Positions 21,130-46,354 are shown, counted from the stretch's first letter. The stretch: DNA of 64,000 nucleotides from Selaginella moellendorffii (GCF_000143415.4 NW_003314285.1:1391370-1455369), one strand, 5' to 3'. Notes: generated by a model from the sequence alone, not told the origin. Made by a program: numbers and translations.

Positions 21130-22908
21130 ATGGACGGGCATTTAGGCCGCACGGCTGTCGTGGTGGAGAACAAGAAGATCGACCTGTACGGACGGCGTGG
21201 CAGCGTGAGAGAGGCGAGGGAGATTTTCGACGCCATAGCTGACAAGAATGCCTACTCGTGGGTGTTGATGCTCTGCGCCTATTCGCGCAATGGGCTCGTC
21301 CGGGAGGCCAAGCTCGTCTTCGATGGAATGCCCGAGCACACCATCGTCTCGCGCAACGCCATGCTCGTCGCCTTCGCCCAGAACGGATTCGTGGACGACG
21401 CGCAGCGCCTGTTTGATTCCATGCCCTGGCGCGACATTGTGTCGTGGAATTCGCTCCTCGCGGCGTATGCCAAGCTGGGGCAAATCCACACGGCGGAGCT
21501 TCTCTTTCGATTGATGCCAGACAGGAATCTCGTCACCTGGAACTCTCTCTTATCGGCTTTTGCGAAACGTGGCAATGCTCTGGAGGCCAGGAGGATGTTT
21601 TCCGCCATGCCACAGTGGGATCTTTTCTCCTGGAACTCGCTTCTTGCGGCAGTTGCCCAACTTGGGCATATAGAATCAGTGAAAACAATTTTTGATCGAA
21701 TGCCTGAGCGTGATGGGGTGTCGTGGAATTCCATTTTGAATCTTTTTTGTCAAACCGGATATATCCACCATGCTGAAACACTGTTCGAACAAATGCCGCA
21801 GCATAATCTTGTCAGCTGGACCTTGATGCTTGTAGCAAATGCTCAATTGGGGCATTTGCGAAAAACAAAGAGTCTCTGGTTAAAGATGCCGCAAAGAGAT
21901 CTGGTTTCCTGGACGACCATGATCAACGCATGTGTCGCGCACGGCGATTTTGCAGAGGCCAAGCGACTGTTTGACGACATGCCGCAGAGGGATTCGGTAT
22001 CGCAGACCGCCATGGTTGCAGCTTATGCCCAATGCGGGCATCTTGATCTTGCGACGCGATTGTTACAGGATATGCCTCGGCACAATCTTCTGTGTTGGAA
22101 CGCAATCCTCGCGGCGACCGCTGCTGAAGGCCGGATAAGCAGAGCAAGCCAGATCTTTGAGGAAATGCCCGAGCAAGACATCGTTTCTTGGAGCACCATG
22201 CTTTCGGCATATGCCCAGAACGGTCTCTTGGACGAAGCCAAGCAAACTTTTGGACTGATGCCTCAGCACAACTCCACGTCTTCGACAGCCATGCTTGCGT
22301 CGTATGCGCAGCACAAGCAGCTGCGAGAGTCCAAGGTTTTGTTCGACAACATGCTGGAACGCGACGTGGTTTCGTGGACTGCAATGCTCGCAGCGTATGC
22401 TCACAATGGTCACGTCAGGCATTCCGAAAGGCTGTTTGAGTCGCTTCCCGAACGGGACACCATCTGCTGGAGCGCTATGCTTGCCGCTCTTGTTCAAAAC
22501 GGGCTCTACTTGGAAGCTTTTGTTGTTTTTGACGAGATGAAGATGGCGGGATCAATTGACAAGGTGTGTTTTGTATCGATCCTCATTGCTTGCAGCCAGG
22601 GAGGGAAGGTTTCCACTGCAAAATCGCTCTTCGTGTCGATGAGTCTTGATTTTGGGTTTCAACCGAGCAAGCAGCACTATTGCTGCATGATCGATGTCTT
22701 TGGGCGAGCCGGGCATTTGGAAAATGCGCAAGATCTTGTAGCTAACATGCCATATGTACCAGATTCGATTCAGTGGAGGTGCTTGTTTGGAGCAAGCCGA
22801 AGTAACAATGATGCTCAACATGGAGCTTCGGTTGCTAGGGAAATAATCGGACTAGAAAAAGAACATTCTGCTTCATATGAGCTTTTTGCCAACTTGATAA
22901 GGTTGTAA
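21130..22908 (+). CDS. PLS-class PPR protein, intact copy (array unit 1)
   Basis: 592-aa intronless ORF of PPR repeats with HYCCMIDVFGRAG E-type end. Confidence 0.93.
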   Translation: MDGHLGRTAVVVENKKIDLYGRRGSVREAREIFDAIADKNAYSWVLMLCAYSRNGLVREAKLVFDGMPEHTIVSRNAMLVAFAQNGFVDDAQRLFDSMPWRDIVSWNSLLAAYAKLGQIHTAELLFRLMPDRNLVTWNSLLSAFAKRGNALEARRMFSAMPQWDLFSWNSLLAAVAQLGHIESVKTIFDRMPERDGVSWNSILNLFCQTGYIHHAETLFEQMPQHNLVSWTLMLVANAQLGHLRKTKSLWLKMPQRDLVSWTTMINACVAHGDFAEAKRLFDDMPQRDSVSQTAMVAAYAQCGHLDLATRLLQDMPRHNLLCWNAILAATAAEGRISRASQIFEEMPEQDIVSWSTMLSAYAQNGLLDEAKQTFGLMPQHNSTSSTAMLASYAQHKQLRESKVLFDNMLERDVVSWTAMLAAYAHNGHVRHSERLFESLPERDTICWSAMLAALVQNGLYLEAFVVFDEMKMAGSIDKVCFVSILIACSQGGKVSTAKSLFVSMSLDFGFQPSKQHYCCMIDVFGRAGHLENAQDLVANMPYVPDSIQWRCLFGASRSNNDAQHGASVAREIIGLEKEHSASYELFANLIRL

Positions 22909-23090
22909 ATTTTATATTTATCCGTCATTTAGGCCCCTTAGTTTGAATAAACTGTAAGTTTTAACATAACTAACCTCTATTCTTACCTTTAATCTCGGAT
23001 ACTTACAAAATGTATGGCGAGATTACCAATAAAATGTAGTGAATATAACAATGTTCTGTGTTTTCTGAAACAGGTTATTTGGAAAATATT

Positions 23091-24275
23091 ATGGCTGGTG
23101 TGAGAGCAATGGTGGATTTGGGTATAGATCATGTACCAAATGAATATTTGACATCCATATGCAAAGGCATAACCATCAAAGCTCCAAACAACCTCCCAAT
23201 TATTGACTTAAGTGGCATAGATAGTGATGATTTGAAAAGAAAATCAGCAGCTGAAGCAATTCATCTAGCATGCCAGAAATGGGGTTTTTTCCAGGTAAAT
23301 AATCTCTTCTGAAATACTTTGCAAATTGTTCTAGTCAGGTCATCGGCCATGGGATATCTAACGAGCTTATGCAAGACATCATCAAAATGGTCCATCACTT
23401 TTTTAACTTGCCTGCCAAGGAAAGGATGGTTTACTACTCAACAGATATCTACAAGAGCTTTAGATTCTCCACAGGATCCATAGCAAGTGCAAAGAAGAAG
23501 TTTTGGAGCGACTATTTGTGTCAGCACTGTAGGCCAGCAGTTCACGAGGATGATGTACCAGAAAGTATTCCAAATTATAGGTACAAACTTTCCTTTAACA
23601 GATCTTCTTCTTTTTTTCTTCTGTTTTAACACTATATATTCATTATAACAAAGGAAAATTACAAGCAATTACGCCAAGGCTGTGGACGAACTTGCCAGAA
23701 AACTATTGCGAATTATTGCTCAAAACCTTGGTCTAGGTTGGCAGATCCTGGAGAAACACTTGGATCCTCCCAAGCAAACCATGAAGATGACATATTATCC
23801 ACAGTGTCCATGCCCTGATCAAGCAATTGGCATAGGCCGCCATGCTGATCCAGGAACCATAACGGTATTACAACAAGAACTTGGAGTTGAGGGCCTTGAG
23901 GTTAACTACAATGGCCAATGGATTCCTGTGAAGCCAGTTGAAGGCGCATTAGTCATTAATATAGCAGACATGCTCCAGGTGAAATAATTTTATGACATTT
24001 TCTATGAGCTCTTAGTTTCCCTCTTACAGATACTAAGCAACAATAAATATAAGAGTGCGGAGCATCAAGTTCTAGTGAACACTAAGAGGCCACGAGTTTC
24101 AATTGCTTCATTTTATGGTCCTACAGATGATAAACATATTGCCCCACTGGAGGAGTTGCTAGGTGACAATCCTCCCATGTTCAAAGCATGCTTGTTCAGA
24201 GAGTACATGGACAGCTTCTACAAGAACCACCTTGGGACGCGAAACATTGAGACACTCAGAATCCTAAACAACTGA
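23091..24275 (+). CDS. DOXC 2OG-Fe(II) dioxygenase (DMR6/S3H/FNS-I-like), unit 1
   Basis: LPIIDLS, ACQKWGFFQV, YYPQCP, HADPG, EHQV and RVSIASF. Introns 23295-23338, 23581-23653 and 23979-24029. Confidence 0.9.
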
Positions 24276-24567: not shown

Positions 24568-25250
24568 ATGGCTGCATTGTTGAGATCCTTCGTTGTTCTC
24601 CTGGTATACAGATTAGCTCATTACTCCACTCCATTGATGTTTCTTCGGTCCATTCCCAGTAATGAATTTTGTTGTTTTCTCGTAGCTTGTCGTCGTCGCG
24701 GTGGAAGCGCGCTCCTGGTCTCCGCTCTACGGCACCAACGCGGGTGTGGGATTCAACGACACGAGTTCTTCCTCGGCGATCAAAACGCTCACCGGAATCC
24801 GCGTACACTACGGCTGGGTGATCGACGGCATCCAGGGACAATACGCCACCGGCAGCTCTTCAACCTGGATGCCTAACCACGGCACAACCACGCAATTCAC
24901 AGAGGTCAGTGGCCCAAAAGAACCAAAATGAGCGTTTCTAATTTCAATCATTCCATTCCATGACGCAGATCCAACTCGCCTATCCGTCGGAGAGGTTCGT
25001 GCGCGCCACTGGCAAGTACGGGCCGTACAGCAGCGAGAAGAACCAGGGTGTCACGGTGACGGAGCTGTCGTTCGTCACGTACAACAACATCACCGGCACG
25101 AGCGTCACGTACGGCCCGTACGGCGGGCATGAGATGAGCAGCCAGACGAGCTTCCAGACGGCGGACGCGAGCGAGATCGTGGGCTTGTATGGATTCACCT
25201 CGGACTACATGCGCGGGATTGGTTTCGCGCTCGAGCCTGCCAAGAACTAG
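24568..25250 (+). CDS. Secreted single-domain jacalin-like lectin, unit 1
   Basis: Spliced signal peptide MAALLRSFVVLL|LVVVAVEA followed by beta-prism motifs GFND, IRVHYGWVIDGIQ, LSFVT, YGPYG and IVGLYG...GIGF. Confidence 0.85.
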
Positions 25251-25581: not shown

Positions 25582-26094
25582 TCAATATGGTTTCTGGCCT
25601 ATATAATTTCCTGGCGGATCATAGTTGCAACTAACAAGGTAAGAATTCATACCATTGCACTGGACATAAGCGCATCCAACTCGAACAGAGTTCTTCCACA
25701 CAACCTGCGTGTAGTGTCCACAGACCTTCCCTGCCGCGCAAGTGTTTGACGCATAGTTGTAGTCGACTTGCTCGCTCACCCAGGCAGCCACAGCGTCAGT
25801 GGCGGGAGGAGCAGGCAAGCCGGGACTTCCCCACCACTTCCACAGATTCTCGCCATATCTCCCACCCGAGTGGATCAGCGCGCAGTTGTTTTGATCCCGG
25901 AGAGTTGCCGCCCAGCTTGATGCAAACGCGGCCACTGTATCGTCCCAAACCAGCCCCGAGACATTCACAGCCGACCGAGCTGCGTTGTGTGCGTCGACAA
26001 GATCAATCTGCTGGCTTGCTTGAAGAACAACCAAAGCATCACAAAAGAAGATCGCCAGAGTTGCAAAGAGGAGAGGAGAGCAAGGAGATTTCAT
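25582..26094 (-). CDS. PR1: Pathogenesis-related protein 1 (CAP/SCP), unit 1
   Basis: Signal peptide, [19 protein letters not shown] and [15 protein letters not shown]. Confidence 0.97.
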
Positions 26095-26874: not shown

Positions 26875-27545
26875 TTGGTCATGTCCAGGGGTTCGATTCC
26901 CGGCGCCGACGCCCTCGGGAGGAGGTCGCGGGGTCGATTCCAGTGGGCGCGCCGGGAGAGTGAAGCTCTTCTTGATCACCCCGAGGAGACCGATCGGCTG
27001 CGCCACAGGCGATCGCGATCGGCGTGCGCGCCGCGGTGGTGGAAATCGTCGTTCCGGGCCCGGGAGGGAAGAAATTCGTCTCCACGGCGCCGTTGTGGCT
27101 GGATTTCTTCTTCCTCTTGCGCAGCCCAAAGAAGGAGGAGATCCAGGAGAGCTTGCCGCCGCCGCCGCTGTGGTGATGGGGATTCCTGGCGCCGCGATGA
27201 TCCCTGTCGACGTGATGAGCCACGGGCGTGGCGGATGCCGATACCAGGGGACTGTGATAGGACCCGGCGGCATTTGCCTTGCAGTTCCGCGTGGAGAAGA
27301 ATCCATCCGCTGGAAACCCTCCTTCCCCCCCATTTCTTGAATCGGGAGCGGCAAATCGAGCAAATGTTGGTGCTGGAGCTCCGCCGCGGCGGGTGCTGCT
27401 GCTGCCACTGCGAGAGAGGAATTCGGGAGCAGCGTGTGGCTGCTGGAAGAATCGCCCGAGAGAGAGAGCCGGAGGAGGCGATCCCGGAGGCACAAGTGAC
27501 CGGCTGCCTCTTGCTGGGATGAACCAAGCACACGCCTGGATCCAT
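26875..27545 (-). pseudogene. DUF740/OCTOPUS-like pseudogene, unit 1
   Basis: Aligns to 43473-44777 with many deletions and frameshifts. The 3' third is missing. Confidence 0.88.
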
Positions 27546-27779
27546 CGCCAAATCGATCTAGTAGCAGCTCGCGTTGGGAGGATACCACCGAAAAAATCCC
27601 GTCGACATGGCCCGCCCGCGTTGTCGGTGAGCGAATTGGGTGTGATCGATCTTGTTGCCAATCTTTGTCTCGGATCCAAATGGACAGCCATGGAGCGCAC
27701 TTTTGGATGGCGCCACCACGAAGCTCGAGCCAAGCAGCGGACGTGAAGGAGAAGTGGATGTATATCTGCATCCTGGCTA

Positions 27780-28203
27780 ACCAAAGCCCAAGAACGTCAA
27801 GTTTCCGTTTCAAGTTGGAATTTTTGGTGACCATCCGACGGTTGCAGAGGTACTCTTGCTTTTCCCTTAACTTCGCTAATTTTCCGTCTACAGGATTTCA
27901 AGATCCCTGTCTGCAAGGGGGACATCATTGCTTTGGGAACTGATGGCCTTTTTGACAATCTCTTCAATGACGACATAACCGAAGTTCTTAAAAATTCTCT
28001 TGGGTCCGACCAAGTCAACTTGAAGGTGAACTCTCGCTGTTGACGAATCTCAAGATCGCCAGGCAGCTGCAGCAGATCGTGTAGCTGGGGCGCAGGCCGA
28101 GCGTTTGGACAGCCCGTTTGCCAGGGCGGCTGCAAAGGCGAGAATGAATTGGAGCGGTGGAAAGCTAGATGATACCATGGCAGTTGTGGCGTTTGTGACG
28201 TGA
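27780..28203 (+). pseudogene. 3' fragment of a PTC7-type PP2C phosphatase
   Basis: FQVG, GDIIALGTDGLFDNLF, DSPFARAA and GGKLDDTMAVVAFV*. No 5' half. Confidence 0.85.
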
Positions 28204-28239
28204 TATTAAGGGTAAACTTTTCAACCAGTTTTTGCGGAG

Positions 28240-28432
28240 GCCAGTGGAGCAGGGCAAGAAGGCATAATTTGGCTCACACCACTCCTCCTTGGCAGCTTTC
28301 CTGAGCCTCAACATGGACGGAAATCCCACTTTGTTGACTGATGATCTGCTATTGATGAGCTGAGCAGCTGATGCTGCCAACGAAGCATGCAAGCAGCATA
28401 AAGATCGGCAAGATGTAGCCTCTCATTCTCAT
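28240..28432 (-). pseudogene. 5' fragment of an NCL-type Na+/Ca2+ exchanger (frameshifted)
   Basis: Signal peptide plus LRL...EEWCEPNYAFLPCST resembles the NCL N-terminal CEQTYGFxPCT motif. 2-bp deletion relative to the unit-2 copy. Confidence 0.65.
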
Positions 28433-28468
28433 GATCAAAGGATCACCCCCTGGTTGATGGAAAAGGTA

Positions 28469-29480
28469 GAGTGTTAAGTCCAAAACATGGCATATGCATC
28501 AATTGTGTAAGATAAAGGGGAATTCATTTTTTATATGTTCTTTATTGATACACAATTAGAAGTATTATTAATAATGACTTTGAATAACATTTTCAACATT
28601 AATATCCAAAATGATGGGTATAAATTACTCCTAAAGCCAAAGACCAATCTTCCTTTCTCTTTTGGTGTTAACACTTTGCCAAAATACTTAATTATAGATA
28701 AAAGTAACCATGAAATTTATGAATGTATCAAATCATCATTATTGTATATTCAAATTGAGCGTATTTATCACAAAAAGGAGTTAGTTTCTTTTTTATTAAA
28801 GTATAGTAATGAGTAAATTGAGTAATACAAAACTCCTTGTAATCAAGAATCCTCAATGCAACACTATGTGTGGCATTACAAGTGGCTACAATTATTGCAC
28901 AAAAAATAAGTTTTTCACAACACTAAATGCTATGGCATTGAAGAAAATGAACTTTGATATCACATCATCTAAGTTTATGTTTCTTGCATCATCAAGTATT
29001 TTCCCAATGTTGCCATTTCACATTCACTTTCAGCCAATAAATGATCCCTCATAGCTTATGAAGTATTCATAGGCTGAGATTAATTAACACTTTCGATACA
29101 AGCTCCAGAAGCAAATGCCCCATCAAAATGTTAACTCTCCATAAATTTGTTATAAAAAGTAAAGACAAAAGTGCATTTGTGATTTGCTCCACAAATATTC
29201 AATAAGTTTGATTTTGAATATAAAGAGGAATGTTTGAAACACTATATGTTTCAATATCATGCCCAAGAATTTTAGCAAAATGTGTTAACTGCCATACATT
29301 TTTCCATAATAATTACATTTCTAATGCCTAAATCTTTTGCCAGAAGCATAAGGAATGAGTTTGGCAACATAGAACTATGCCCAATCAAGCACCATTGTTC
29401 AACTGTGTCAGAATCGCTCTCTAAAATCACTGGAATCATACTTTTCTATTTTAGGGCAAAATTACAGTTCATGTGAAGCC
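28469..29480 (-). mobile_element. Highly degraded hAT (DUF659-type) transposase remnant
   Basis: AT-rich. Minus frames read DDVISKFIFFNAIAFSVV, INVENVIQ and EFPFILHN*CICHVLDL, resembling hAT IARFFY..GIPFN, ENVVQ and CAAHCLDL. Absent from the second linker. Confidence 0.7.
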
Positions 29481-29679
29481 TTAGCAAGCTGCTCCACGCT
29501 CAATCTAAAGTGGGGCCGACCGACTGGAGAGTGTTATAGCCCTCTTGGTCGGATTCGATGTAAACTTGCTGGGCTGGGCATTTGTGGATGGATGGATCGC
29601 TCCATAGCAGCAGGAGAACCAGCAAAGTGGTGGAGACGGATCGGGATTCTAGCTGAACGCGGTCGGGACCAACAATGCT

Positions 29680-29960
29680 AGATCTGCACCGACTCACCTC
29701 AGATTCTAGAAATCTAGCAGCGTAGCGGCAATGCAACCTGCGCCATCAATCGATCTCCTCCACGGGCAAATATCTGATAAGTAGTGGAATATTCTGGTTC
29801 CCGTGAATCGTCTCGAGTGTGCCTCTTAATCGTGTCACTTGGAAACGAGCCCAGCTCAGAAGACACACAAATTTTTCTAGTTACGTGTTCGTCATCTGAA
29901 AAGAGGATTACAAGGACGACGAAAGCCAATATAATATACACTACACCCCTTTTCGTCCAA
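29680..29960 (-). pseudogene. Unidentified gene fragment with N-terminal TM segment (linker 1)
   Basis: GVVYIILAFVVLVILFS...PEYSTTYQIFARGGDR. Second copy at 37854-38135. Confidence 0.45.
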
Positions 29961-30175
29961 CTATGTACCTCACATACACACATGCTTTGTAAGTACATTT
30001 TTTAGAAGCTTTTCATCGACATCGAAGGGGCCTCCTCATATACATTGTCCTCAAAATATGTAAAGGGAAGAAAAAAAACGAAGAAGAACGCTAATAGTAA
30101 GAGACCTGGTGTAAGCAAAAAGATGGATGCCCCCCTCCCTCCCCCTAAGTAGTGTTGTTGTTACATCGTCAATGT

Positions 30176-31140
30176 AGCGACTGTTTGACGACATGCCGCA
30201 GAGGGATTCGGTATCGCAGGCCGCCATGGTTGCAGCTTATGCCCAATGCGGGCATCTTGATCTTGCGACGCGATTGTTACAGGAGATGCCTCGGCACAAC
30301 CTTCTGTGTTTGAATGCAATCCTCTTGGCGACCGCTACCGAGGTCCGGATAAGCAGAGCAAGCCAGATCTTTGAGGAAATGCCCGAGCAAGACATCGTTT
30401 CTTGGAGCACCATGCTTTTGGCATATGCCCAGAACGGTCTCTTGGACGAAGCCAAGCAAACTTTTGGACTGATGCCTTAGCNNNNNNNNNNNNNNNNNNN
30501 NNNNNNNNNNNNNNNNNNNNNNNNNNNNNNNNNNNNNNNNNNNNNNNNNNNNNNNNNNNNNNNNNNNNNNNNNNNNNNNNNGCAGCTGCGAGAGTCCAAG
30601 GTTTTGTTCGACGACATGCTGGAACGCGACGTGGTTCCGTGGACTGCGAGGTCACGTCAGGCATTCCGAAAGGCTGTTTGAGTCGCTTCCCGAACGGGAC
30701 ACCATCTGCTGGAGCGCTATGCTTGCCGCTCTTGTTCAAAACGGGCTCTACTTGGAAGCTTTTGTTGTTTTTGACGAGATGAAGATGGCGGGATCAATTG
30801 ACAAGGTGTGTTTTGTATCGATCCTCATTGCGGAGGGAAGGTTTCCACTGCAAAATCGCTCTTCGTGTCGATGAGTCTTGATTTTGGGTTTCAACCGAGC
30901 AAGCAGCACTATTGCTGCATGATCGATGTCTTTGGGCGAGCCGGGCATTTAGAAAATGCGCAAGATCTTGTGGCTAACATGCCATATGTACCAGATTCGA
31001 TTCAGTGGAGGTGCTTGTTTGGAGCAAGCCGAAGTAAAAATGATGCTCAACATGGAGCTTCGGTTGCTAGGGAAATAATCGGACTAGAAAAAGAACATTC
31101 TGCTTCATATGAGCTTTTTGCCAACTTGATAAGGTTGTAA
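30176..31140 (+). pseudogene. 5'-truncated PPR pseudogene, unit 2
   Basis: Starts mid-gene (equivalent of 21962). Premature TAG at 30478-30480 and deletions. Confidence 0.9.
30482..30581. other. Assembly gap (100 N)
   Basis: Run of N. Confidence 1.
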
Positions 31141-31284: not shown

Positions 31285-32567
31285 ATGGCTGGTGTGAGAG
31301 CAATGGTGGATTTGGGTATAGATCATGTACCAAATGAATATTTGACATCCATATGCAAAGGCATAACTATCAAAGCTCCAAACAACCTCCCAATTATTGA
31401 CTTAAGTGGCATAGATAGTGATGATTTGAAAAGAAAATCAGCAGCTGAAGAAATTCATCTAGCTTGCCAAAAATGGGGTTTTTTCCAAGTAAATAAATCT
31501 CTTCTGAAATACTTTGCAATTGTTTTAGTCAGGTCATTGGCCAAGACATTATCAAAATGGTTCATTACTTTTTTAACTTGCTTGCCAAGGAAATGATGGT
31601 TTACTATTCAATAGATATCTATAAGAGCTTCAAATTCTCCACAGGATCCACATCTTACCGATATCTCAAACCTAAAATACTAATCCAAAGTAAACCACAA
31701 AGAACATGTGGTAATGCGAAAAGCCAAAAACCATAAAAGAACAATTAACTATCATAAAAGATTATCAATTTTCATAGCAAATGCAAGTAAAAAGTTTTGA
31801 ACCGACTATTTGTTCCAGCACTGTAGGCCAGCAGTTCACGAGGATGATGTACCAGAATGTATTCCAAATTACAAGTACAAACTTTCCTTTAACAGATCTC
31901 TTTTTTTTTTCTCTGTTTTAACACTATATATTAATTATAACAAAGGAAAATTACAAGCAATTACGCCAAGGCTGTGGACAAACTTGCCAGAAAACTATTG
32001 CGAATTATTGCTCAAAACCTTGGTCTAGATTGGCAGATCCTGGAGAGACACTTGGATCCTCCCAAGCAAACCATGAAGATGACATATTATCCACAGTGTC
32101 CATGCCCTGATCAAGCAATTGGTATAGGTTGTCATGCTGATCCAGGAACCATAACGGTATTACAACAAGAACTTGGAGTTGAGGGCCTTGAGGTTAACTA
32201 CAATGGCCAATGGATTCCTGTGAAGCCAGTTGAAGGCGCATTAGTCATTAATGTAGCAGACATGCTCCAGGTGAAATAATTTGATGACATTTTCTATGAG
32301 CTCTTAGTTTCCCTCTTACAGATACTAAGCAACAATAAATATAAGAGTACGGAGCATTGAGTTCTAGTGAACACTAAGAAGCCACGAGTTTCAATTGCTT
32401 CATTTTATGGTCCTACAGATGATAAACATATTGCCCCACTGGAGGAGTTGCTAGGTGACAATCCTCCCATGTTCAAAGCATGCTTGTTCAGAGAGTACAT
32501 GGACAGCTTCTACAAGAACCACCTTGGGACGCGAAACATTGAGACACTCAGAATCCTAAACAACTGA
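31285..32567 (+). pseudogene. 2OG-Fe(II) dioxygenase pseudogene, unit 2
   Basis: About 124-bp insertion at 31651-31774, TGG>TGA at about 31798, HRV>H* (TGA 32358-32360) and a 24-bp deletion in exon 2. Confidence 0.9.
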
Positions 32568-32858: not shown

Positions 32859-33541
32859 ATGGGTGCATTGTTGAGATCCTTCGTTGTTCTCCTGGTATAC
32901 AGATTAGCTCATTACTCCACTCCATTGATGTTTCTTCGATCCATTCCCAGTGATGAATTTTGTTGTTTTCTCGTAGCTTGTCGTCGTCGCGGTGGAAGCG
33001 CGCTCCTGGTCTCCGCTCTACGGCACCAACGCGGGTGTGAGATTCAACGACACGAGTTCTTCCTCGGCGATCAAAACTCTCACCGGAATCCGCGTACGCT
33101 ACGGCTGGGTGATCGACGGCATCCAGGGACAATACACCACCGGCAGCTCTTCAACCTGGATGCCTAACCACGGCACAACCACGCAATTCACAGAGGTCAG
33201 TGGCCCAAAAGAACCAAAATGACCGTTTCTAATTTCAATCATTCCATTCCATGACGCAGATCCAACTCGCCTATCCGTCGGAGAGGTTCGTGCGCGCCAC
33301 TGGCAAGTACGGGCCGTACAGCAGCGAGAAGAACCAGGGTGTCACGGTGACGGAGCTGTCGTTCGTCACGTACAACAACATCACCGGCAAGAGCGTCACG
33401 TACGGCCCCTACGGCGGGCATGCGATGAGCGGCCAGAAGAGCTTCCAGACGCCGGACGCGAGCGAGATCGTGGGCTTGTATGGATTCACCTCGGACTACA
33501 TGCGCGGGATTGGTTTCGCACTCGAGCCTACCAAGAACTAG
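32859..33541 (+). CDS. Secreted jacalin-like lectin, unit 2 (intact)
   Basis: Same three-exon structure with no disruptions seen. Confidence 0.85.
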
Positions 33542-35402: not shown

Positions 35403-36391
35403 TCAGCGTCCCTCCTCAGCGGAGTTAGAATCCCCAGTCACTGTTACCGTTACCGCTAACATGGGCCGTCGGATTTGCCAGCACGGACGACGGCGATTCG
35501 TTCCGTGTCACGGGCTGGCACACGTGGCGGCCGCGCACTTGCGGTCGATGTCCATCAAGGACGCCACGCTGGACCTCGACCCCCGCTGCCCTCCACGTCA
35601 TACGCCGCGTTGGTAATCACCTCCCTCATGTCCAGCGCGATGAGCGAGGCCACCCGGGGTTCGATTCCCGGCGCCGACGCCCTCGGGGGCTCCAAGGAGG
35701 AGGTCGCGGGGTCGATTCCAGTGGGCGTGCCGGGATGGTCGAGTGGAGGATCCCCTAGAGGAGTGAAGCTCGTCTTGATCACGCGCCCGGAGGAGACCGA
35801 TCGGCTGCGCCACAGGCGATCGCAATCGGCGTGCGCGCCGCGGTGGTGGAAATCGTCGTTCCAGGCCTCGGGAGGGAAGAAATTCGTCTCCACGGCGCCG
35901 TTGTGGCTGGATTTCTTCTTCCTCTTGCGCAGCCCAAAGAGGGAGGAGATCCAGGAGAGCTTGCCGCCGCCGCCGCTGTGGTGATGGGGATTCCTGGCGC
36001 CGCGATGATCCCTGTCAACGTGATGAGCCACGGGCGTGGCGGATGCCGATACCAGGGGACTCTGATAGGACCCGGCGGCATTTGCCTGGCAGTTCCGCGC
36101 GGAGGAGAATCCATCCCCGAATCGGGAGCGGCGAATCGCGCGAACGCTGGATCCTTGGTGCTGGAGCTCCGCCGCGGCGGGTGCTGCTGCTGCCACTGCG
36201 AGAGAGATTTGGACCTGGGAAGACACGATGGAACGGTCTTGGAGCACGAGGAGGAATCGAAGGAGCTCCTGGAGGAGGAGGAATTCGGGAGGAGCGTGTT
36301 GGAAGAATCGCCCGAGAGAGAGAGCCGGACGAGGACAAACCCCCACCGGCTGCCTCTTGCTGGGATGAACCAAGCACACGCCTGGATCCAT
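35403..36391 (-). pseudogene. DUF740/OCTOPUS-like pseudogene, unit 2
   Basis: Full span present but riddled with internal deletions relative to 43473-44777. CHLCLRDRL is lost. Confidence 0.88.
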
Positions 36392-37184
36392 CGCCAAATC
36401 GATCTAGTAGCAGCTCGCGTTGGGAGGATACCACCGCAAAAATCCCGTCGGTGAGTGAATTGGTGATCGATCTTGTTGCCAATCTTTGTCTCGAGTCTCC
36501 AGGATCCAAATGGACAGCCATGGAGCGCACTTTTGGATGGCGCCACCACGAAGCTCGAGCCAAGCAGCGGATGTGCGACAAGGAATGGTTCGTCCAAATG
36601 GTGGCCACTTGTGACACCACCACGCAGCTGTGGGCGAATGCGCAAAATCTCCGGGTAAGAATAGGATTTCTCGATCGAATTCTTGGTTTTTTCGTTTTAG
36701 CTTCTCTCAATTTTCCAGGATCGCAAGCTTTGGAGCATGGGGTGGCTCCAGCGATCCGAGTTCTCCGACCTTTTCGGGGCCCAAATGCCGGGCGTGCAAG
36801 GGGCAGGGGAAGATCTGTGATGGATCGTCCATGAGCAACAGCAAGGAGCTCCAGATCATGGATGTGTGACTGATAGTGTGTTGATAGTGTGCCCAAAATC
36901 TAGCCTGGCGCCAGCACCATGGTTCTTACGATTGAACCATAGCTGTGCAATAAAAGGTATCTCCACCTAATAGAGAGCTCTTGGCTTGGTCAATTAAAGC
37001 TTGGATCTCTGCTTTAGTAGGAGACTTGGCTAGCCAGAGAAGCATGTTGTCCAAAGACGTTTTGTTTTAGCGTCCTAAAAACATCCATTTCTACTCTGGA
37101 TCCATCGGCTCGTTGTAAATCCCTACATGTCGCTTGAAGGAGAAGTCACCGTTCCTGGATATAATATTAATCTCAAATAAGTTT

Positions 37185-37520
37185 AACCAAAGCCCCGTCA
37201 ACTTTCCGTTTCAAGTTGGAACTTTTGGTGACCATCCGACGGTTGCAGATGCTTTTCCCTTAACTTCGCTAATTTTCCGTCTACATGTCTGCAAGGACAT
37301 CATTGTTTTGGGAACTGATGGCCTTTTTTCACAATCTCTTCAACGACGACATAATCGAAGTTCTTACAAAATCTCTTGGGTCCGACCAAGTCAACATGAA
37401 GGTGAACTCTCGCTGTTGAAGAATCTCAACCTGATCATTGATAAACTCTTCACTTTACAGGCAGCTGCAGCAGACCTTGTAGCTGGGGCGCAGGCCGAGC
37501 GTTTGGACAGCCCGTTTGAC
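37185..37520 (+). pseudogene. PTC7-type PP2C fragment (linker 2)
   Basis: FQVGTFGDHP, DIIVLGTDGLF and AAAADLVAGAQAERLDSPF. Copy of 27780-28203. Confidence 0.8.
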
Positions 37521-37576
37521 GTGATATTTGGGTCGCGAAGGGTAAACTTTTCAAGCAGTTTTTGCGGAGGCCAGTG

Positions 37577-37771
37577 TCAGGCCGTTGATTTTTGCGGAGG
37601 CCAATTCGGCTCACACGACTCCTCCTTGGCAGCTTTCCTGAGCCTCAACACGGACGGAAATCCCGCCTTGTCGACCGATGATCCGCTACTGACGAGCTGA
37701 GCGGCCGCCGCTGCCAAGGAAAAGCATGCGAGCAGCACAAAGATCGGCAAGATGTAGCCTCTCGCCCTCAT
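37577..37771 (-). pseudogene. NCL-type exchanger 5' fragment (linker 2)
   Basis: MRARGYILPIFVLLACF...KEESCEPN with YAFLPC deleted. Confidence 0.6.
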
Positions 37772-37853
37772 GATCGAAGGGTAACCCCCTGGTCGATGGA
37801 AAAGGTATCCCTGTGGCGCGGAGCTCTAGATCTGCGCCGACTCACCTCGGATT

Positions 37854-38135
37854 CTAGAAATCTAGCAGCGTAGCCGCAATGCACCCGGCGCCATTGATTG
37901 ATCGATCTCCTCCGCGGGCAAATATCTGATAAGTAGTGGAATATTCTGGTTCCAGTGAATCTAGGCCGTCCGTCCTGGCTAGCGCTGAGCTAATCGTGTC
38001 ACTTGGAAACGAGCCCAGCTGAGAAGACACACAAATTTTTCTAGTTACGTGGTGTTCGTCATCTCGAGACACTGAAAAGAGGACTACAAGGACGACGAAA
38101 GCCAATATAATATAAACTACACCCTTTTCGTCCAA
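37854..38135 (-). pseudogene. Unidentified TM gene fragment (linker 2)
   Basis: Copy of 29680-29960. Confidence 0.45.
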
Positions 38136-38278
38136 TTATGTACACATACTTTGTTAAAAGCTTTTCATCGACATCGAAGGGGCCTCCCGGAAGAAAAAAA
38201 CGAAGAAGAACGCTAATAGTAAGAGACCTGGTGTAAGCAAAAAGATGGATGCCCCCCTTGTTGTTACATCGTCAATGT

Positions 38279-39198
38279 AGCGACTGTTTGACGACATGCC
38301 GCAGAGGGATTCGGTATCGCAGACCGCCATGGTTGCAGCTTATGCCCAATGCGGGCATCTTGATCTTGCGACGCCATTGTTACAGGATTGTTGGAACGCA
38401 ATCCTCGCGGCGACCGCTGCTGAAGGCCGGATAAGGAGAGCAAGCCAGATCTTTGAGGAAATGCCCGAGCAAGACATCGTTTCTTGGAGCACCATGCTTT
38501 CGGCATATGCCCACAACTGTCTCTTGGACGAAGCCAAACAAACTTTTGGACCGATGCCTCAGCACAACTCCACGTCTTCGACAGCCATGCTTGCGTCGTA
38601 TGCGCAGCACAAGCAGCTGCGAGAGTCCAAGGTTTTGTTCGACAACATGCTGGAACGCGACGTGGTTTCGTGGACTGCGATGCTCGCAGCGTATGCTCAC
38701 AATGGTCACGTCAGGCATTCCGAAAGGAGTGCTGCTTGCTCGGTTGAAACCCAAAATCAAGACTCATCGACACGAAGAGCGATTTTGCAGTGGAAACCTT
38801 CCCTCCCTGGCTGCAAGCAATGAGGATCGATACAAAACACACCTTGTCAATTGATCCCGCCATCTTCATCTCGTCAAAAACAACAAAAGCTTCCAAGTAG
38901 AGCCCGTTTTGAACAAGAGCGGCAAGCATAGCGCTCCAGCAGATGGTGTCCCGTTCGGGAAGCGACTCAAACAGATTGCTGCATGATCGATGTCTTTGGG
39001 CGAGCCGGGCATTTGGAAAATGCGCAAGACCTTGTGGCTAACATGCCATATGTACCAGATTCGATTCAGTGGAGGTGCTTGTTTGGAGCAAGCCGAACTA
39101 ACAATGATGTTCAACATGGAGCTTCGGTTGCTAGGGAAATAATCGGACTAGATCATTCTGCTTCATATGAGCTTTTTGCCGACTTGATAAGGTTGTAA
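38279..39198 (+). pseudogene. 5'-truncated PPR pseudogene with internal inversion, unit 3
   Basis: Same truncation point as unit 2. 38728-38974 is the reverse complement of 22432-22678. Confidence 0.92.
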
Positions 39199-39380
39199 AT
39201 TTTTTATTTATCCGTCCTTAAGGCCTTTAGTTTAAATAAATTGTAAATCTATAACTTTAGTTTAAACATAACTAACCTCTATTCTTGGGATACTTACAAA
39301 ATGTATGGCGAGATTACCAATAAAATGTAGTGAATATAACAATGTTCTGTGTTTTCTGAAACAGGTTACTTGGAAATATT

Positions 39381-40568
39381 ATGGCTGGTGTGAGAGCAAT
39401 GGTGGATTTGGGTATAGATCATGTACCAAATGAATATTTGACATCCATATGCAAAGGCATAACCATCAAAGCTCCAAACAACCTCCCAATTATTGACTTA
39501 AGTGGCATAGATAATGATGATTTGAAAAGAAAATCAGCAGCTGAAGAAATCCATCTAGCTTGCCAGAAATGGGGTTTTTTCCAGGTAAGTAAATCTCTTC
39601 TGAAATACTTTGCAAATTGTTCTAGTCAGGTCAGCGGCCATGGGATATCTAACGAGCTTATGCAAGACATCATCAAAATAGTCCATTACTTTTTTAACTT
39701 GCCTGCCAAGGAAAGGATGGTTTATTACTCAACAGATATCTACAAGAGCTTTAGATTCTCCACAGGATCCATAGCAAGTGCAAAGAAAAAGTTTTGGAGC
39801 GACTATTTGTTCCAGCACTGTCAGCCAGCAGTTCACGAGGATGATGTACCAGAAAGTATTCCAAATTACAGGTACAAACTTTCCTTTCACATGTCTTTTT
39901 ATTTTACTTTTTTCTGTTTTAACACTATATATTCATTATAACAAAGGAAAATTACAAGCAATTACGCCAAGGCTGTGGACGAACTTGCCAGAAAACTATT
40001 GCGAATTATTGCTCAAAACCTTGGTCTAGATTGGCAGATCCTGGAGAAACACTTGGATCCTCCCAAGCAAACCATGAAGATGACATATTATCCACAGTGT
40101 CCATGCCCTGATCAAGCAATTGGTATAGGTTGTCATGCTGATCCAGGAACCATAACGGTATTACAACAAGAACTTGGAGTTGAGGGCCTTGAGGTTAACT
40201 ACAATGGCCAATGGATTCCTGTGAAGCCAGTTGAAGGCGCATTAGTCATTAATGTAGCAGACATGCTCCAGGTGAAATAATTTGATGACATTTTCTATGA
40301 GCTCTTAGTTTCCCTCTTACAGATACTAAGCAACAATAAATATAAGAGTGCGGAGCATCGAGTTCTAGTGAACACTAAGGGGCCACGAGTTTCAATTGCT
40401 TCATTTTATGGTCCTACAGATGATAAACATATTGCCCCACTGGAGGAGTTGCTAGGTGACAATCCTCCCGTGTTCAAAGCATGCTTGTTCAGAGAGTACA
40501 TGGACAACTTCTACAAGAACCACCTTGGGACGCGAAACATTGAGACGCTCAAAATCCTAAACAACTGA
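39381..40568 (+). CDS. DOXC 2OG-Fe(II) dioxygenase, unit 3 (intact)
   Basis: HADPG, EHRV and RVSIASF intact, with the same three introns. Confidence 0.9.
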
Positions 40569-40851: not shown

Positions 40852-41510
40852 ATGGCTGCATTGTTGAGATCCTTTGTTGTTCTCCTGGTATACATATTAG
40901 CTCATTTTTCCAATGATGTTTCTGTGATGAATTCTTTTGTTTTGTCGTAGCTTGTCGTCGTCACGGTGGAAGGGCGCTCCTGGTCTCCGCTCTACGGCAC
41001 CAACGCGGGAGTGGGATTCAACGACATGAGTTCTTCCTCGGCGATCAAAACTCTCACCGCAATCCGCGTACACTACGGCTGGGTGATCGACGGCATCCAG
41101 GGACAATACGCCACCGGCAGCTCTTCAACCTGGATGGCTAACCACGGCACAACCACGCAATTCACAGAGGTCAGTCTCCCAAAAGAACCAAAATGAGCAG
41201 TTTTCTCTTCTCCTAATCATTCCCTTCCATGACGCAGATCCAAGTCGCCTATCCGTATGAGAGGTTCGTGCGCGCCACCGGCAAGTACGGGCCATACAGC
41301 AGCGAGCAGAACCAGGGGGTCACGGTGACGGAGCTGTCGTTCGTCACGTACAACAACATCACCGGGAAGAGCGTCACGTACGGCCCGTACGGCGGGCATG
41401 AGATGAGCGGCCAGACGAGCTTCCAGACGGCGGACGCGAGCGAGATCGTGGGCTTGTATGGATTCACCTCTGACTACATGCGCGGGATTGGTTTTGCGCT
41501 CGAGCCTTAG
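40852..41510 (+). CDS. Secreted jacalin-like lectin, unit 3 (intact, most divergent)
   Basis: Three exons, ending ALEP*. Confidence 0.85.
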
Positions 41511-42453: not shown

Positions 42454-43472
42454 GTTGCTGGGGCGATGTTCACAATCAAGAGCAAACTCCTACGTTTATA
42501 TGCAAAGTCGTTGTTCTGATCGAGTTTTTCCACTTGTGGCGCCGACTTAGCGCTTGCGATTGTATACGATTTTTTGCTGCGACGGTGACCCATGAATCGA
42601 GTACGTTTTAGTTTGGTGCTCCATGACTTTAGCCGCCTCTTTTTCTTCCACAGCTCGAGGAGCTTCTCTTCTGGACACCCTCTGGATACAAATTCATGGA
42701 TCTTTCTTTGGCAGTTTCCTCAAGCAACTTGAATCCTCCACATGAATCCATTACCAACACTTCAGTGTTTGCGTGAACTAACTGTATCCCACGCAAAGGA
42801 TTCTATTTTGTATTCAAGGTGGTGGTGATGGTCTTTATCTTGGGATTAAAGACTGCAAAATAAGCATACAAACCATGACAGACAGCAGTTGGTCCTTGTC
42901 AGCGATTTAAACAGCGAAGCAAACATTCCAGGCTCAGTAATCTAGTCTAGTCCTCGAAACCAAAGAAAAAAAAAACAAAGAAAAAATTTCCGTGCAATCC
43001 CAAATCTCTCACTTGCACATGTTCTATCCACCCCAAAGGTTTTTGACACACTATATTACACTGGTTGGTGTGCCAACATCGCCAACTTTGAGAGATTTTA
43101 AGACACCCCAAAAGAGCAAATCACTCCATCGTCTCTTTTGAATCCATCTTCACTTGAGTGGATCCCAAAGAGAGGAAAGAGAGAAATTACAGAATTGTGA
43201 GAAAATCTTATATAACACACCGGTGGGTAGTCCTGTCTTCTACTCCCAAAAAATCTCCTTGTTCCCTAGTGGGGCTCGATCTGTACAGCTTTGTTTTTGT
43301 TCTTCCATTGTCACTCTCAAACTTTTCTCGAATCTCTTCCAGTGTGAAGCTTCACAAAACGAAAAAAAGAAGAATTACATTAGAGCCATCAATCCTAAAT
43401 GCAAAGTAAGCCTCGACACGATCGATCCAAGTCACTGTTTGATCCGATCTCGCGTAGTTTTTGCGTTTAATC

Positions 43473-44777
43473 TCAGCGCCCCTGCTTGCTACCACCCCTG
43501 CTCTTGTTAAAAGTCCTCAGCGGAGTTAGATAGAATCCCCAGTCACTGTTACCGTTACCGCTACCATGGGCCGTCGGATTTGCCAGGACGGACGACGGCG
43601 ATTCGCTCCGTATCATCCGGCGCCACCCGCCCGTGCTCCGGCTCCTCTGCAGCACGGTCGGGCTGGCACACGTGGCGGCCGCGCACTTGCGGTCGATGTC
43701 CATCAAGGACGCCACGCTGGACCTCGGCCCCGCCACGTACGCGGCACCCCCGTCCCCGCTGTCCTCCACGTCATACGCCGCGTTGGTAATCACCTTGGTC
43801 ATGTCCAGCGCGATGAGCGAGGCCACCCGGGGTTCGATTCCTTGCGCCGACGCCCTCGGGGGCTCCAAGGAGGAGGTCGCGGGGTCGATTCCAGTGGGCG
43901 CGCCGGGATGGTCGAGTGGAGGGTCCCCGAGAGGAGTGAAGCTCTTCTTGATCACGCGCCCCGAGGAGACCGATCGGCTGCGCCACAGGCGATCGCGATC
44001 GGCGTGCGCCCCGCGGTGGTGGAAATCGTCGTTCCAGGCCTCGGGAGGGAAGAAATTCGTCTCCACGGCGCCGTTGTGGCTGGACTTCTTCTTCCTCTTG
44101 CGCAGCCCAAAGAGGGAGGAGATCCAGGAGAGCTTGCCGCCGCCGCCGCTGTGGTGATGGGGATTCCTGGCGCCGCGATGATCCCTGTCAACGTGATGAG
44201 CCACGGGCGTGGCGGATGCCGATACCAGGGGACTGTGATAGGATCCAGCGGCATTCTTGGAGTTCCGAGCGGAGGAGAATCCATCCGCTGGAAACCCTCC
44301 TTCCCCCCCATTTCTTGAATCGGGAGCGGCGAATCGCGCAAACGCTGGATCCTTGGTGCTAGAGCTCCGCCGCGGCGGGTGCTGCTGCTGCCACTGCGAG
44401 AGAGATTTGGACCTGGGAAGACACGATGGAACGCTCTGCTCTACCTCTTCGTCGTCCTCCTCGCCTACATCCCCCTCTTTCTCCTCGATTCGAGCCACTG
44501 CCTCCTCGCTATCGCTCTCCATGAGCGAGAAGATCGTGCCGAGCTTACCGACGACGCTGCCGCTGCCGCATTTGCCATTGCCGTTGCTGTCGTCGGTCTT
44601 GGAGCACGAGGAGGAATCGAAGGAGCTCCTGGAGGAGGAGGAATTCGGGAGGAGCGTGTGGCTGCTGGAAGAATCGCCCGAGAGAGAGAGCCGGACGAGG
44701 CGATCCCGGAGGCACAAGTGACAAACCCCCACCGGCTGCCTCTTGCTGGGATGAACCAAGCACACCCCTGGATCCAT
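43473..44777 (-). CDS. DUF740/OCTOPUS-like protein, intact copy
   Basis: N-terminal CLVHP...GVCHLCLRDRL signature, Ser-rich, intronless. True ATG at 44777 (the track start is TTG). Confidence 0.85.
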   Translation of the reverse strand: MDPGVCLVHPSKRQPVGVCHLCLRDRLVRLSLSGDSSSSHTLLPNSSSSRSSFDSSSCSKTDDSNGNGKCGSGSVVGKLGTIFSLMESDSEEAVARIEEKEGDVGEEDDEEVEQSVPSCLPRSKSLSQWQQQHPPRRSSSTKDPAFARFAAPDSRNGGEGGFPADGFSSARNSKNAAGSYHSPLVSASATPVAHHVDRDHRGARNPHHHSGGGGKLSWISSLFGLRKRKKKSSHNGAVETNFFPPEAWNDDFHHRGAHADRDRLWRSRSVSSGRVIKKSFTPLGDPPLDHPGAPTGIDPATSSLEPPRASAQGIEPRVASLIALDMTKVITNAAYDVEDSGDGGAAYVAGPRSSVASLMDIDRKCAAATCASPTVLQRSRSTGGWRRMIRSESPSSVLANPTAHGSGNGNSDWGFYLTPLRTFNKSRGGSKQGR

Positions 44778-46354
44778 CGCCAAATCGATCTAGTAGCAGC
44801 GAGCGCGAGAGGGAGAGAAGAAGAAGAATCGATCGATTGCTCCTGGAAATCCCGGCCAATTCGCGCAAGAACACGCCGCTAGGCTAGATCGTGGCGGTCA
44901 AGGCGAGTGAAATCCTCCAGAGAAGAAAATGGAGCCATCCATCTTCACTAGCGTCTAAACCCTAAGCCAGCCGTTTTACACGCAATTAATCCTAACCCTC
45001 GCCCATTTAATTAACCGCGCGTGGATATTCGCTGCCGCCAGCGTCCATTCAATGCCAGATATTCGCTCCCGGGAGAAATCTGGGCCGTTGGGCCGCGAGT
45101 TTTAATTGCACCTCCTTTATACCTTGGCTGGGCGATGTGTAAATCTCTTAAAAATTCGCTATTCTTCCGCCTGGCAGCGCTGCGCTGTTGTGGCGACTGT
45201 TTGAATGGATCTCCGCGAATTTCTTTTTGTCTGTTGATCCCGAATCGTCACTCGCCACTGCCGTTGATTGGTCGCTGTTGCTTTCAGCGGAAAAAAATGC
45301 TACTACCATCTTCGTCTTCCTTCCTGAGAGATTTGCAAAGACGAGAGAGTGAGCGAGTGGCGGTCGAAGTCAGCTTAATAACAAAGTGAGTGGTGTGGAC
45401 GAGCCAAAGTGATGATCGATCCAGAAAAACCAGCGGGGCGAGAGTGTAAATACCTTTGTGATTGATTGATCGATCCATCCATCGGTCGCTTCCCTGCTGT
45501 ACCGCTGCAACGCCTGTCTTCCTCTTAGCAAGATCACGAGCGATCACCACCTGTAAGCATGCCGTGCATAAAAACAACGGAGGAATTCTTTCTCCTGCTT
45601 TTCTGTTTGTACCTGTTCTCGATCCAGCGCTGCAGTGACATCACGGACCAGCTGCAGCGAAACTGGCCATGGGTCTCCTCAAAATGCCTCTTGTTTGGAT
45701 GCGCTCGCTTGTTTTCTTCTTTGCGGCTGATAAGTCAAGCAAAAAGATTAGTCAATGCGGAGAAAAGGAGACAAAGTATGCTGTGATGCTTACTTGAATA
45801 TCATAAGTGGATTGGAGTCGGAGTGGTCCCGTAAAGGCCATCGTCACAGATGACAATCGCAGAAGAAATCCTTTTCCCCGCTCTCACTTCTCCCCTGCCG
45901 AAATCAAATCGAGCTCCCAAACCATGGAAACGTTTTCATGTGAGCGCAGCAGCTCCAGCACGTGAAAACCTTCAAGCGCTCCTGTCTGCGAGTGTGCAGT
46001 GCCCTTTCCTATACGTACCCAAATTCATGAACTAGAGATCCAAAAACAAATGCCAAGCGAGAGAGGTACTATACCGATGCGCAGAGAGAGAGCTAGAAAT
46101 TTATTTCCCAGTGTTGGGTGTGGTCGCCTGCAAATGCCCTGTCCCTCGAGACGAGCATCTTTGGCAACCGCAATTTTCTGGCTACGCAACAACTGCCGTG
46201 AGTCGCATTTACAGGCCATACCGCAAAGCTTGACGCCTTTTGATTCTCTCACCAGACATATCACTGTAAAGATACAAGAGAGAGGAAGGACCGTCAGCAA
46301 AGCTTGGTTGCTTTACTGAGAAACTTACGGAAATAGGAAAGAACTGGCACTCCT

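What the first reader, a model, noticed from the sequence alone, without database searches (positions are those of the whole stretch)
21962..44800. Amplified non-homologous defence cassette (dioxygenase + secreted lectin + PR-1) with selective retention
Seen: five unrelated genes were triplicated together. Jacalin and PR-1 are intact in 3/3 copies and the 2OGD in 2/3, while PPR and DUF740 are intact in 1/3, the extra copies being truncated, inverted or full of deletions. Known: PR-1 is the canonical salicylate-responsive protein, DMR6/S3H-type DOXC enzymes hydroxylate salicylate or flavonoids, and jacalins act in defence. Inference: a co-regulated apoplastic immunity module under dosage selection, which I am not aware has been described in lycophytes. 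Caveat: the extra PPR and DUF740 copies lost their 5' ends or promoters at birth, so their decay is partly mechanistic.
Basis: partly seen in the sequence, partly recalled or inferred. Interest (0 to 1): 0.75.

Follow-up and report, generated by a model that had tools for sequence, protein, structure and literature searches.

The report
Tandem triplicated PR-1/lectin/dioxygenase gene block
A stretch of about 8 kb of spikemoss (Selaginella moellendorffii) DNA carrying a PR-1 defence gene, a secreted jacalin-like gene and a dioxygenase gene has been copied three times in a row; the whole genes are kept working by selection and the cut-off edge genes are decaying, which is ordinary behaviour for a tandem duplication and does not show a coordinated immunity module.

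Summary
Window 21962-44800 is a head-to-tail array of three units about 8.2 kb apart.

- **Intact genes:** Copy 2 of the dioxygenase has a 24-bp deletion, a 124-bp insertion and two stops.
- **Edge genes:** PPR and the DUF740-like gene are each intact 1/3. The duplication breakpoints lie inside the PPR gene and 23 bp upstream of the DUF740-like ATG, so their extra copies were born dead.
- **Selection:** intact exons are almost free of indels, 1 in-frame event in 1050 columns against about 21 expected (P~1e-8). Pooled dN/dS is about 0.4.
- **Gene conversion:** the copies are mosaics of conversion tracts.
- **Not an assembly artefact:** a second scaffold has its own three PR-1 genes plus the DUF740-like gene, though one PR-1 there is frameshifted.
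- **Assembly gap:** it lies in a dead PPR fragment, and its flanks are collinear with copy 1.

The "co-regulated apoplastic module under dosage selection" reading is not supported. There is no shared promoter and no defence cis-motifs. The dioxygenase is cytosolic and not demonstrably DMR6/S3H-type. The lectin lacks the canonical sugar-binding Asp. Copy number is not strictly maintained. Expression and synteny could not be tested.

Verdict: an ordinary tandem segmental duplication.

The parts
21962..44800 (.). Whole tandem array: three units (U1 21962-30175, U2 30176-38257, U3 38258-44800)
   Evidence: start-to-start spacing about 8.2 and 8.0 kb; 91-96% BLAST identity in the gene-bearing part
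21130..22908 (+). Intact PPR gene (592 aa). Its first 832 nt lie outside the repeat
   Evidence: ORF; PPR, 345.6 bits; repeat starts at 21962
30176..31140 (+). PPR 3' fragment of U2. It is 5'-truncated, has a stop and deletions, and contains the assembly gap 30482-30581
38258..39198 (+). PPR 3' fragment of U3. It is 5'-truncated and has a 21-nt deletion and a 247-bp inversion (38728-38974)
   Evidence: I1, 100% complementary to 22432-22678
23091..24275 (+). 2OG/Fe(II) dioxygenase, copy 1, intact. Four exons: 23091-23294, 23339-23580, 23654-23978, 24030-24275. 338 aa, with HxD...H and RxS present
31285..32567 (+). 2OG dioxygenase, copy 2, pseudogene. It has a 24-bp deletion, a 124-bp insertion in exon 2 and two premature stops
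   Evidence: The public model EFJ24521.1 splices around the defects and drops the distal His
39381..40568 (+). 2OG dioxygenase, copy 3, intact. All splice sites are conserved
24568..25250 (+). Jacalin-like gene, copy 1. Three exons: 24568-24603, 24686-24904, 24969-25250. 178 aa, with an N-terminal hydrophobic signal-like leader
32859..33541 (+). Jacalin-like gene, copy 2, intact
40852..41510 (+). Jacalin-like gene, copy 3, intact. Deletions fall in the introns only, plus a 9-bp in-frame deletion before the stop
25582..26094 (-). 170 aa, single exon
43473..44777 (-). The only intact DUF740-like gene (434 aa, single exon). Its promoter lies outside the repeat
   Evidence: U3 lineage: 8 synonymous against 2 nonsynonymous changes
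26878..27568 (-). DUF740-like remnant of U1. Large deletions, promoterless
35413..36414 (-). DUF740-like remnant of U2. Several frame-breaking deletions, promoterless
27569..30175 (.). Junction filler 1. No match to either flank of the array. Includes a 1.2-kb AT-rich stretch (28469-29677) that is absent from filler 2
   Evidence: no Pfam hit for its ORFs
36415..38257 (.). Junction filler 2. About 80% identical to filler 1
30482..30581 (.). Assembly gap (100 N). It replaces about 49 nt of the unit, and its flanks are collinear with U1

Best explanation
This is an ordinary tandem segmental duplication in a very gene-dense genome.

Proposed history:
1. An ancestral single-copy stretch ran PPR - 2OG dioxygenase - jacalin-like - PR-1 - DUF740-like.
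2. It was duplicated with one breakpoint inside the PPR gene (21962) and the other 23 bp upstream of the DUF740-like start codon (44800). About 2 kb of filler DNA sits at the junction.
3. Unequal crossing-over then produced a third unit, which copied the junction as well. Steps 1-3 are inferred from the layout: three gene blocks but only two fillers.
4. The three genes lying wholly inside the unit were copied with their own short promoters. Purifying selection mostly keeps them functional. This is shown by the lack of indels and by dN/dS of about 0.4.
5. The two genes cut by the breakpoints produced dead-on-arrival fragments that decay at the neutral rate (shown).
6. Gene conversion between units keeps the copies similar and makes them mosaics (shown).

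The PR-1 copies most likely encode secreted PR-1 proteins carrying the CAPE peptide motif. The jacalin-like copies most likely encode small secreted beta-prism proteins with an altered sugar pocket. The dioxygenase is a cytosolic DOXC enzyme of unknown substrate. Nothing beyond adjacency links the three.
For: - **Array geometry and breakpoints:**
- **Indels:** noncoding columns carry 47 events in 2319 columns, and introns alone carry 7 in 321. The jacalin and PR-1 exons carry 1 in-frame event in 1050 columns (Poisson P about 1e-8). The 2OGD exons of U1 and U3 carry 0 in 1017 nt (P about 1e-6). The DUF740-like remnants carry 23 events in 1308 columns and the PPR fragments 12 in 1038.
- **Substitutions:** pooled over intact copies there are 29 synonymous and 42 nonsynonymous changes, omega 0.42, P=4e-4. 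As an internal control, the functional DUF740-like copy has omega 0.08 while its two remnants have 0.4-0.5.
- **Gene conversion:** the 'odd copy out' changes in long runs along the unit. It is U2 across PPR to 2OGD exon 2, U3 across the lectin, and U1 between the lectin and PR-1.
- **Concerted evolution:** residue 69 of PR-1 is N in all copies here and K in all three copies on the sister scaffold.
- **Sister array:** three PR-1 genes (EFJ13341-13343) plus a 97%-identical DUF740-like gene (EFJ13344) lie on a 1.03-Mb scaffold.
- **Context:** other multi-gene tandem triplications have been noted in this genome by this scan. These are unchecked notes.
Against: - dN/dS does not cleanly separate intact copies (0.42) from broken ones (0.54). 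Counts are small and gene conversion blurs the lineages.
- The origin of the filler DNA is unknown.
- An assembly gap lies inside the array, and a 6.4-kb unplaced contig carries a PR-1 one residue different from copy 2. The exact copy number is therefore not beyond doubt.
- Absence of evidence for co-regulation is not evidence of absence. No expression data could be reached.
Confidence: 0.8

Rival explanations
1. One reading: 2OGD, secreted lectin and PR-1 form a co-regulated immunity cassette, and its amplification was favoured for dosage.
For: - All three internal genes are under purifying selection in most copies.
- PR-1 and the lectin both carry signal-like leaders.
- PR-1 keeps an invariant CAPE motif in all intact copies.
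- An array with three PR-1 genes is also present on a second scaffold.
- Defence gene families often expand in tandem (general knowledge).
Against: - There is no shared promoter and no W-box or conserved as-1 motif.
- The 2OGD is cytosolic, is not shown to be DMR6/S3H-type (PMC8839085), and is dead in copy 2.
- One PR-1 copy is frameshifted in the sister array.
- The lectin lacks the canonical sugar-binding Asp.
- The block boundaries cut two genes, as expected of a random breakpoint and not of a selected cassette.
Confidence: 0.13
2. Assembly artefact: haplotypes or collapsed repeats were joined in tandem, so the real locus has fewer copies, or a different number of copies.
For: - There is a 100-N gap inside U2.
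- A 6.4-kb unplaced contig carries a PR-1 almost identical to copy 2.
- This assembly is known to contain two haplotypes (PMC8839085).
Against: - There are three copies, not two.
- The copies differ by 4-9% including many indels, a 247-bp inversion and kilobase insertions. That is far more than the 1.5% difference between haplotypes.
- The gap flanks are collinear with U1 to the last base.
- A separate 1.03-Mb scaffold carries its own three PR-1 genes.
Confidence: 0.04

Closest known systems
Tandemly duplicated plant PR-1 (CAP superfamily) gene arrays
   Same: The protein is a small secreted CAP-domain protein with six Cys and the C-terminal CNYD...PxGNxxxxxPY (CAPE) motif. Its best PDB matches are plant basic PR-1 (9lyt) and tomato P14a (1cfe). 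RefSeq already names the sister copies 'pathogenesis-related protein PRB1-2'. The family was expanded by local duplication.
   Different: Here each duplicated unit also carries unrelated genes. Induction by salicylate or pathogens is unknown in this lycophyte.
Mannose-binding jacalin-related lectins (e.g. Parkia lectin 1zgr, artocarpin 1j4s)
   Same: The C-terminal half matches Pfam Jacalin positions 63-135 and these lectins. The exon layout splits the domain in two. An unchecked scan note says this is the normal layout for plant jacalin genes.
   Different: It has a signal-like leader, whereas most mannose-type jacalins are cytoplasmic (my own knowledge). Arg replaces the sugar-binding Asp of the G-x-x-x-D loop (YMR in place of YLD). 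The N-terminal half is not detectable when searched as a lone exon.
DOXC-class plant 2OG dioxygenases (DMR6/S5H, S3H/DLO1, JOX, ACO, F3H)
   Same: It has DIOX_N plus 2OG-FeII_Oxy domains, an HxD...H triad and RxS. The closest solved structures are At5g05600, ACC oxidases and F6'H1.
   Different: It cannot be assigned to a subfamily. Identity to anything outside its own cluster is at most 49% in the best-conserved exon. Public names are generic. No S. moellendorffii enzyme falls in the SA-hydroxylase clade DOXC38 according to PMC8839085 (citing Kawai 2014).
Plant operon-like metabolic or defence gene clusters
   Same: Three or more non-homologous genes lie side by side.
   Different: There is no evidence for a shared pathway or for co-expression. 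The adjacency is explained by gene density plus a single segmental duplication.

Membership tests
Plant PR-1 (CAP superfamily) | CAP/SCP domain | tested here: met
   Pfam CAP scores 70.4 bits against a cut-off of 21.1. phmmer to plant PR-1 9lyt gives E 1.5e-42 and to P14a 1cfe gives 5.5e-33.
Plant PR-1 (CAP superfamily) | N-terminal signal peptide and six conserved cysteines | tested here: inconclusive
   A hydrophobic leader and six Cys in the mature part were read directly from the translations. No signal-peptide predictor was available.
Plant PR-1 (CAP superfamily) | C-terminal CAPE motif PxGNxxxxxPY preceded by CNYx | tested here: met
   CNYD followed by [11 protein letters not shown] at the C-terminus is invariant in all six intact copies. 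The motif definition is from my own knowledge.
Plant PR-1 (CAP superfamily) | Induction by salicylate or pathogens | not testable with these tools
Jacalin-related lectins | Jacalin beta-prism domain | tested here: inconclusive
   Exon 3 hits Pfam Jacalin positions 63-135 at 35.9-37.6 bits, against a cut-off of 22. Exon 2 alone gives no hit.
Jacalin-related lectins | Sugar-binding Asp in the C-terminal G-x-x-x-D loop | tested here: not met
   In the alignment to Parkia lectin, the query's YMR aligns with the lectin's YLD. This holds in all three copies.
DOXC 2OG/Fe(II) dioxygenases | DIOX_N plus 2OG-FeII_Oxy domains with HxD...H and RxS | tested here: met
   Met in U1 and U3. In U2 a stop follows the distal His.
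DMR6/S3H salicylate hydroxylases (DOXC38) | Orthology to DMR6, DLO1 or DLO2 | tested here: inconclusive
   The nearest named relatives are not DMR6-like. No DMR6 reference sequence was available for a tree. The literature reports no S. moellendorffii member of DOXC38 (PMC8839085).
DUF740 (PF05340; OCTOPUS-like) | Match to the Pfam model | tested here: not met
   No Pfam hit at E<=10. The word search finds only the protein itself. Protein-language-model neighbours are DUF740 clusters: 19 of 30 hits, score 0.94. This is a lead only.
Co-regulated defence gene cluster | Co-expression or shared regulatory elements | tested here: inconclusive
   Each gene has its own promoter. PR-1 is convergent with the lectin. 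No W-box or conserved as-1 element occurs in the nine promoters. Expression is not testable here.

The most novel reading that the evidence does not exclude
The three internal genes could be a lycophyte 'defence island'. On this reading the PR-1, the secreted jacalin-like protein and the neighbouring dioxygenase are co-induced on attack. Selection would maintain the whole block as a multi-copy array in both haplotypes, with concerted evolution keeping it uniform. That would be an early-diverging example of a mixed-family immunity cassette.
Probability: 0.1. Interest if true: 0.55.

Novelty: new member of a known kind. Interest (0 to 1): 0.25.

Why it matters
The locus gives a clean internal control for how young tandem duplicates behave in a compact plant genome. 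Complete genes show constraint: no frame-breaking indels and dN/dS of about 0.4. Breakpoint-truncated neighbours in the same array decay at the intron and intergenic rate, and gene conversion patches the copies.

For lycophyte immunity it adds three intact PR-1 genes with a conserved CAPE motif, and three secreted jacalin-like genes with a changed sugar pocket. These are candidates for expression studies.

It also flags annotation problems. The public model EFJ24521.1 turns the dead dioxygenase copy into a 'protein'. The intact copies appear only as fragments among the models retrieved.

Tried and rejected
- **The look-up of encoding contigs:** Synteny on the sister scaffold or in other assemblies, and transcript evidence, could therefore not be obtained.
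- **Joined spliced proteins:** Only single exons by reference and public models returned by the tools were used. This is why the lectin's N-terminal half and its public annotation remain unchecked.
- **Pfam for the fifth gene:** nothing at E<=10. The word search returned only the protein itself.
- **Pairwise dN/dS:** values were 0.3-1.0 with tiny counts, and similar for dead and live copies. This was replaced by lineage-polarised counts and an indel test.
- **Defence cis-motifs:** W-box, as-1, GCC-box and G-box gave nothing shared or conserved, apart from one GCC-box upstream of each PR-1 copy.
- **Filler DNA:** no match to the array's flanks, no Pfam hits, and no convincing terminal repeats around the 1.2-kb insertion.
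- **RNA genes:** Rfam and tRNA scans of the whole window found nothing.
- **Literature:** no description of a PR-1/jacalin/2OGD block in Selaginella was found.


Full report
**What is there**

The window is from Selaginella moellendorffii (earlier notes; protein look-up). Self-comparison shows three head-to-tail units:
- U1 is 21962-30175, U2 is 30176-38257 and U3 is 38258-44800.
- BLAST identity is 91-96% over the gene-bearing part.
- The third unit stops at 44800.
- A 1.8-2.6 kb 'filler' is present only between units (27569-30175 and 36415-38257). The two fillers are about 80% identical to each other and match neither flank of the array.
- So there are three gene blocks and two junctions. 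That is the layout expected if one duplication created a junction and unequal crossing-over then added a unit. This history is inferred.

**The gap**

- The 100-N gap (30482-30581) lies in the PPR fragment of U2.
- U1 aligns without gaps up to 22267, which corresponds to 30481, and resumes at 22317, which corresponds to 30582.
- The flanks are therefore collinear, and about 49 nt of the unit are unread.
- The frame across the gap cannot be known.
- This does not matter for the fragment's status. It lacks the first 832 nt of the gene and already has a stop just before the gap.

**The genes**

Pfam identifies four of the five genes:
- *PPR:* a 592-aa protein at 21130-22908.
- *DOXC-type 2OG dioxygenase:* I model four exons, confirmed by tblastn of distant homologues across 23088-24269. 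The HxD...H and RxS motifs are present.
- *Jacalin-like gene:* three exons with GT/AG sites read directly. It encodes 178 aa with a hydrophobic leader.
- *CAP/PR-1 gene:* single exon, 170 aa, on the minus strand.

The PR-1 assignment is solid. Its best solved relatives are plant basic PR-1 and tomato P14a. RefSeq names the sister copies PRB1-2. The C-terminal CNYD...PxGNxxxxxPY motif is invariant.

The fifth gene is a 434-aa single exon at 43473-44777 on the minus strand. It has no Pfam hit and no word-search relatives. Its protein-language-model neighbours are DUF740 clusters, so 'DUF740-like' is a lead and not a tested membership.

**The counts**

- PR-1 is 3/3 and the lectin is 3/3.
- 2OGD is 2/3. 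U2 has a 24-bp deletion, a 124-bp insertion and two stops.
- PPR is 1/3 and the DUF740-like gene is 1/3.

The left breakpoint (21962) is inside the PPR ORF. The right one (44800) is 23 bp upstream of the DUF740-like ATG.

**Selection**

In the three-way alignment, indel events per category were as follows:

| Category | Indel events | Columns |
|---|---|---|
| All noncoding | 47 | 2319 |
| Introns alone | 7 | 321 |
| Lectin + PR-1 exons | 1 (9 bp, in frame) | 1050 |
| 2OGD exons, U1 and U3 | 0 | 1017 nt |
| DUF740-like remnants | 23 | 1308 |
| PPR fragments | 12 | 1038 |

- Against the noncoding rate, the Poisson probability is about 1e-8 for the lectin and PR-1 exons and about 1e-6 for the 2OGD exons of U1 and U3.
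- Lineage-polarised substitutions give omega of about 0.42 pooled over intact copies (P=4e-4).
- The live DUF740-like copy has omega 0.08, against 0.4-0.5 for its dead copies.
- dN/dS alone does not separate live from dead copies well. Pooled broken copies give 0.54. The indel evidence carries the argument.

**Concerted evolution**

- The copy that differs from the other two changes in long runs along the unit. That is the signature of gene-conversion tracts.
- The three PR-1 copies here share N69, and the three on a second 1.03-Mb scaffold share K69.
- That scaffold carries EFJ13341-13343 (PR-1) followed by EFJ13344, a 97%-identical DUF740-like protein.
- The array is therefore not two haplotypes joined in tandem.
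- One PR-1 on that scaffold (EFJ13341) is a frameshifted copy. Its odd C-terminus is the +2 frame of the gene.

**Is it a module?**

Nothing beyond adjacency says so:
- *Gene density:* genes here are 180-330 bp apart, so any 6-8 kb duplication takes several with it.
- *Orientation:* 2OGD and the lectin are in tandem, and PR-1 converges on the lectin, so there is no shared promoter.
- *Cis-motifs:* no W-box or conserved as-1 motif occurs in the nine promoters.
- *The dioxygenase:* it has no leader, so it is not apoplastic. In its best-conserved exon it is at most 49% identical to anything outside its own cluster. Its relatives carry mixed names. The nearest solved structures are At5g05600 and ACC oxidases.
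- *Literature on SA hydroxylases:* PMC8839085, citing Kawai 2014, reports that no S. moellendorffii enzyme falls in the SA-hydroxylase clade DOXC38, and that 'DMR6-like' labels in this species rest on identities below 45%.
- *The lectin:* it has Arg where mannose-binding jacalins have the sugar-binding Asp.
- *Dosage:* one 2OGD copy is dead here and one PR-1 copy is dead in the sister array, so three doses are not strictly kept.

**Limits**

Exons were searched by reference, and public models returned by the tools were used instead.
- Signal peptides were judged by eye.
- The scan has noted other multi-gene tandem triplications in this genome. Those notes are unchecked, but they suggest the pattern is common here.

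**Verdict**

The mechanism is an ordinary tandem segmental duplication, with purifying selection on the complete genes, neutral decay of the breakpoint fragments, and gene conversion. The immunity-module reading remains an untested possibility of about 10%.

Noticed in passing
window 31285-32567 (public model EFJ24521.1 = P0010): The public annotation models the dead 2OGD copy 2 as a 331-aa '2-oxoacid-dependent dioxygenase'. It does so by splicing around the insertion and the stops, which removes the distal catalytic His. Apart from that model of the dead copy, the close public models retrieved are fragments of 145-185 aa (P0011, P0021, P0024).
   Followed up: partly
window 38728-38974 vs 22432-22678: A 247-bp segment of the PPR fragment in U3 is inverted. 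It is 100% complementary to U1, although the flanks are only about 97-99% identical at aligned sites. This points to a recent inversion, a conversion event, or a local assembly quirk.
   Followed up: no
sister scaffold (1,032,227 bp), protein EFJ13341.1 = P0008: One of the three PR-1 genes of the sister array is frameshifted. Its annotated C-terminus equals the +2 frame of the PR-1 gene, and it loses three Cys and the CAPE motif.
   Followed up: yes
unplaced 6,377-bp contig, protein EFJ04297.1 = P0005: A small separate contig carries a PR-1 that differs by one residue from copy 2 in this window. It is probably an unplaced allelic piece of this hard-to-assemble array.
   Followed up: no
window 28469-29677 and 36576-37183: The two junction fillers differ by a 1.2-kb AT-rich stretch found only in filler 1 and a 0.6-kb stretch found only in filler 2. 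No terminal repeats, Pfam hits or RNA families were found, and the origin is unknown.
   Followed up: partly
window 21962-27568 (three-way alignment): Noncoding DNA of the array shows an unusually high indel load: about 20 events per kb, against roughly 50-130 variable sites per kb. This may reflect a deletion-prone compact genome, or alignment or assembly noise.
   Followed up: no
window 19587-20651 (-): Just upstream of the array lies a 354-aa ORF with an AtC3H46-type PABC domain and a CCCH zinc finger.
   Followed up: no
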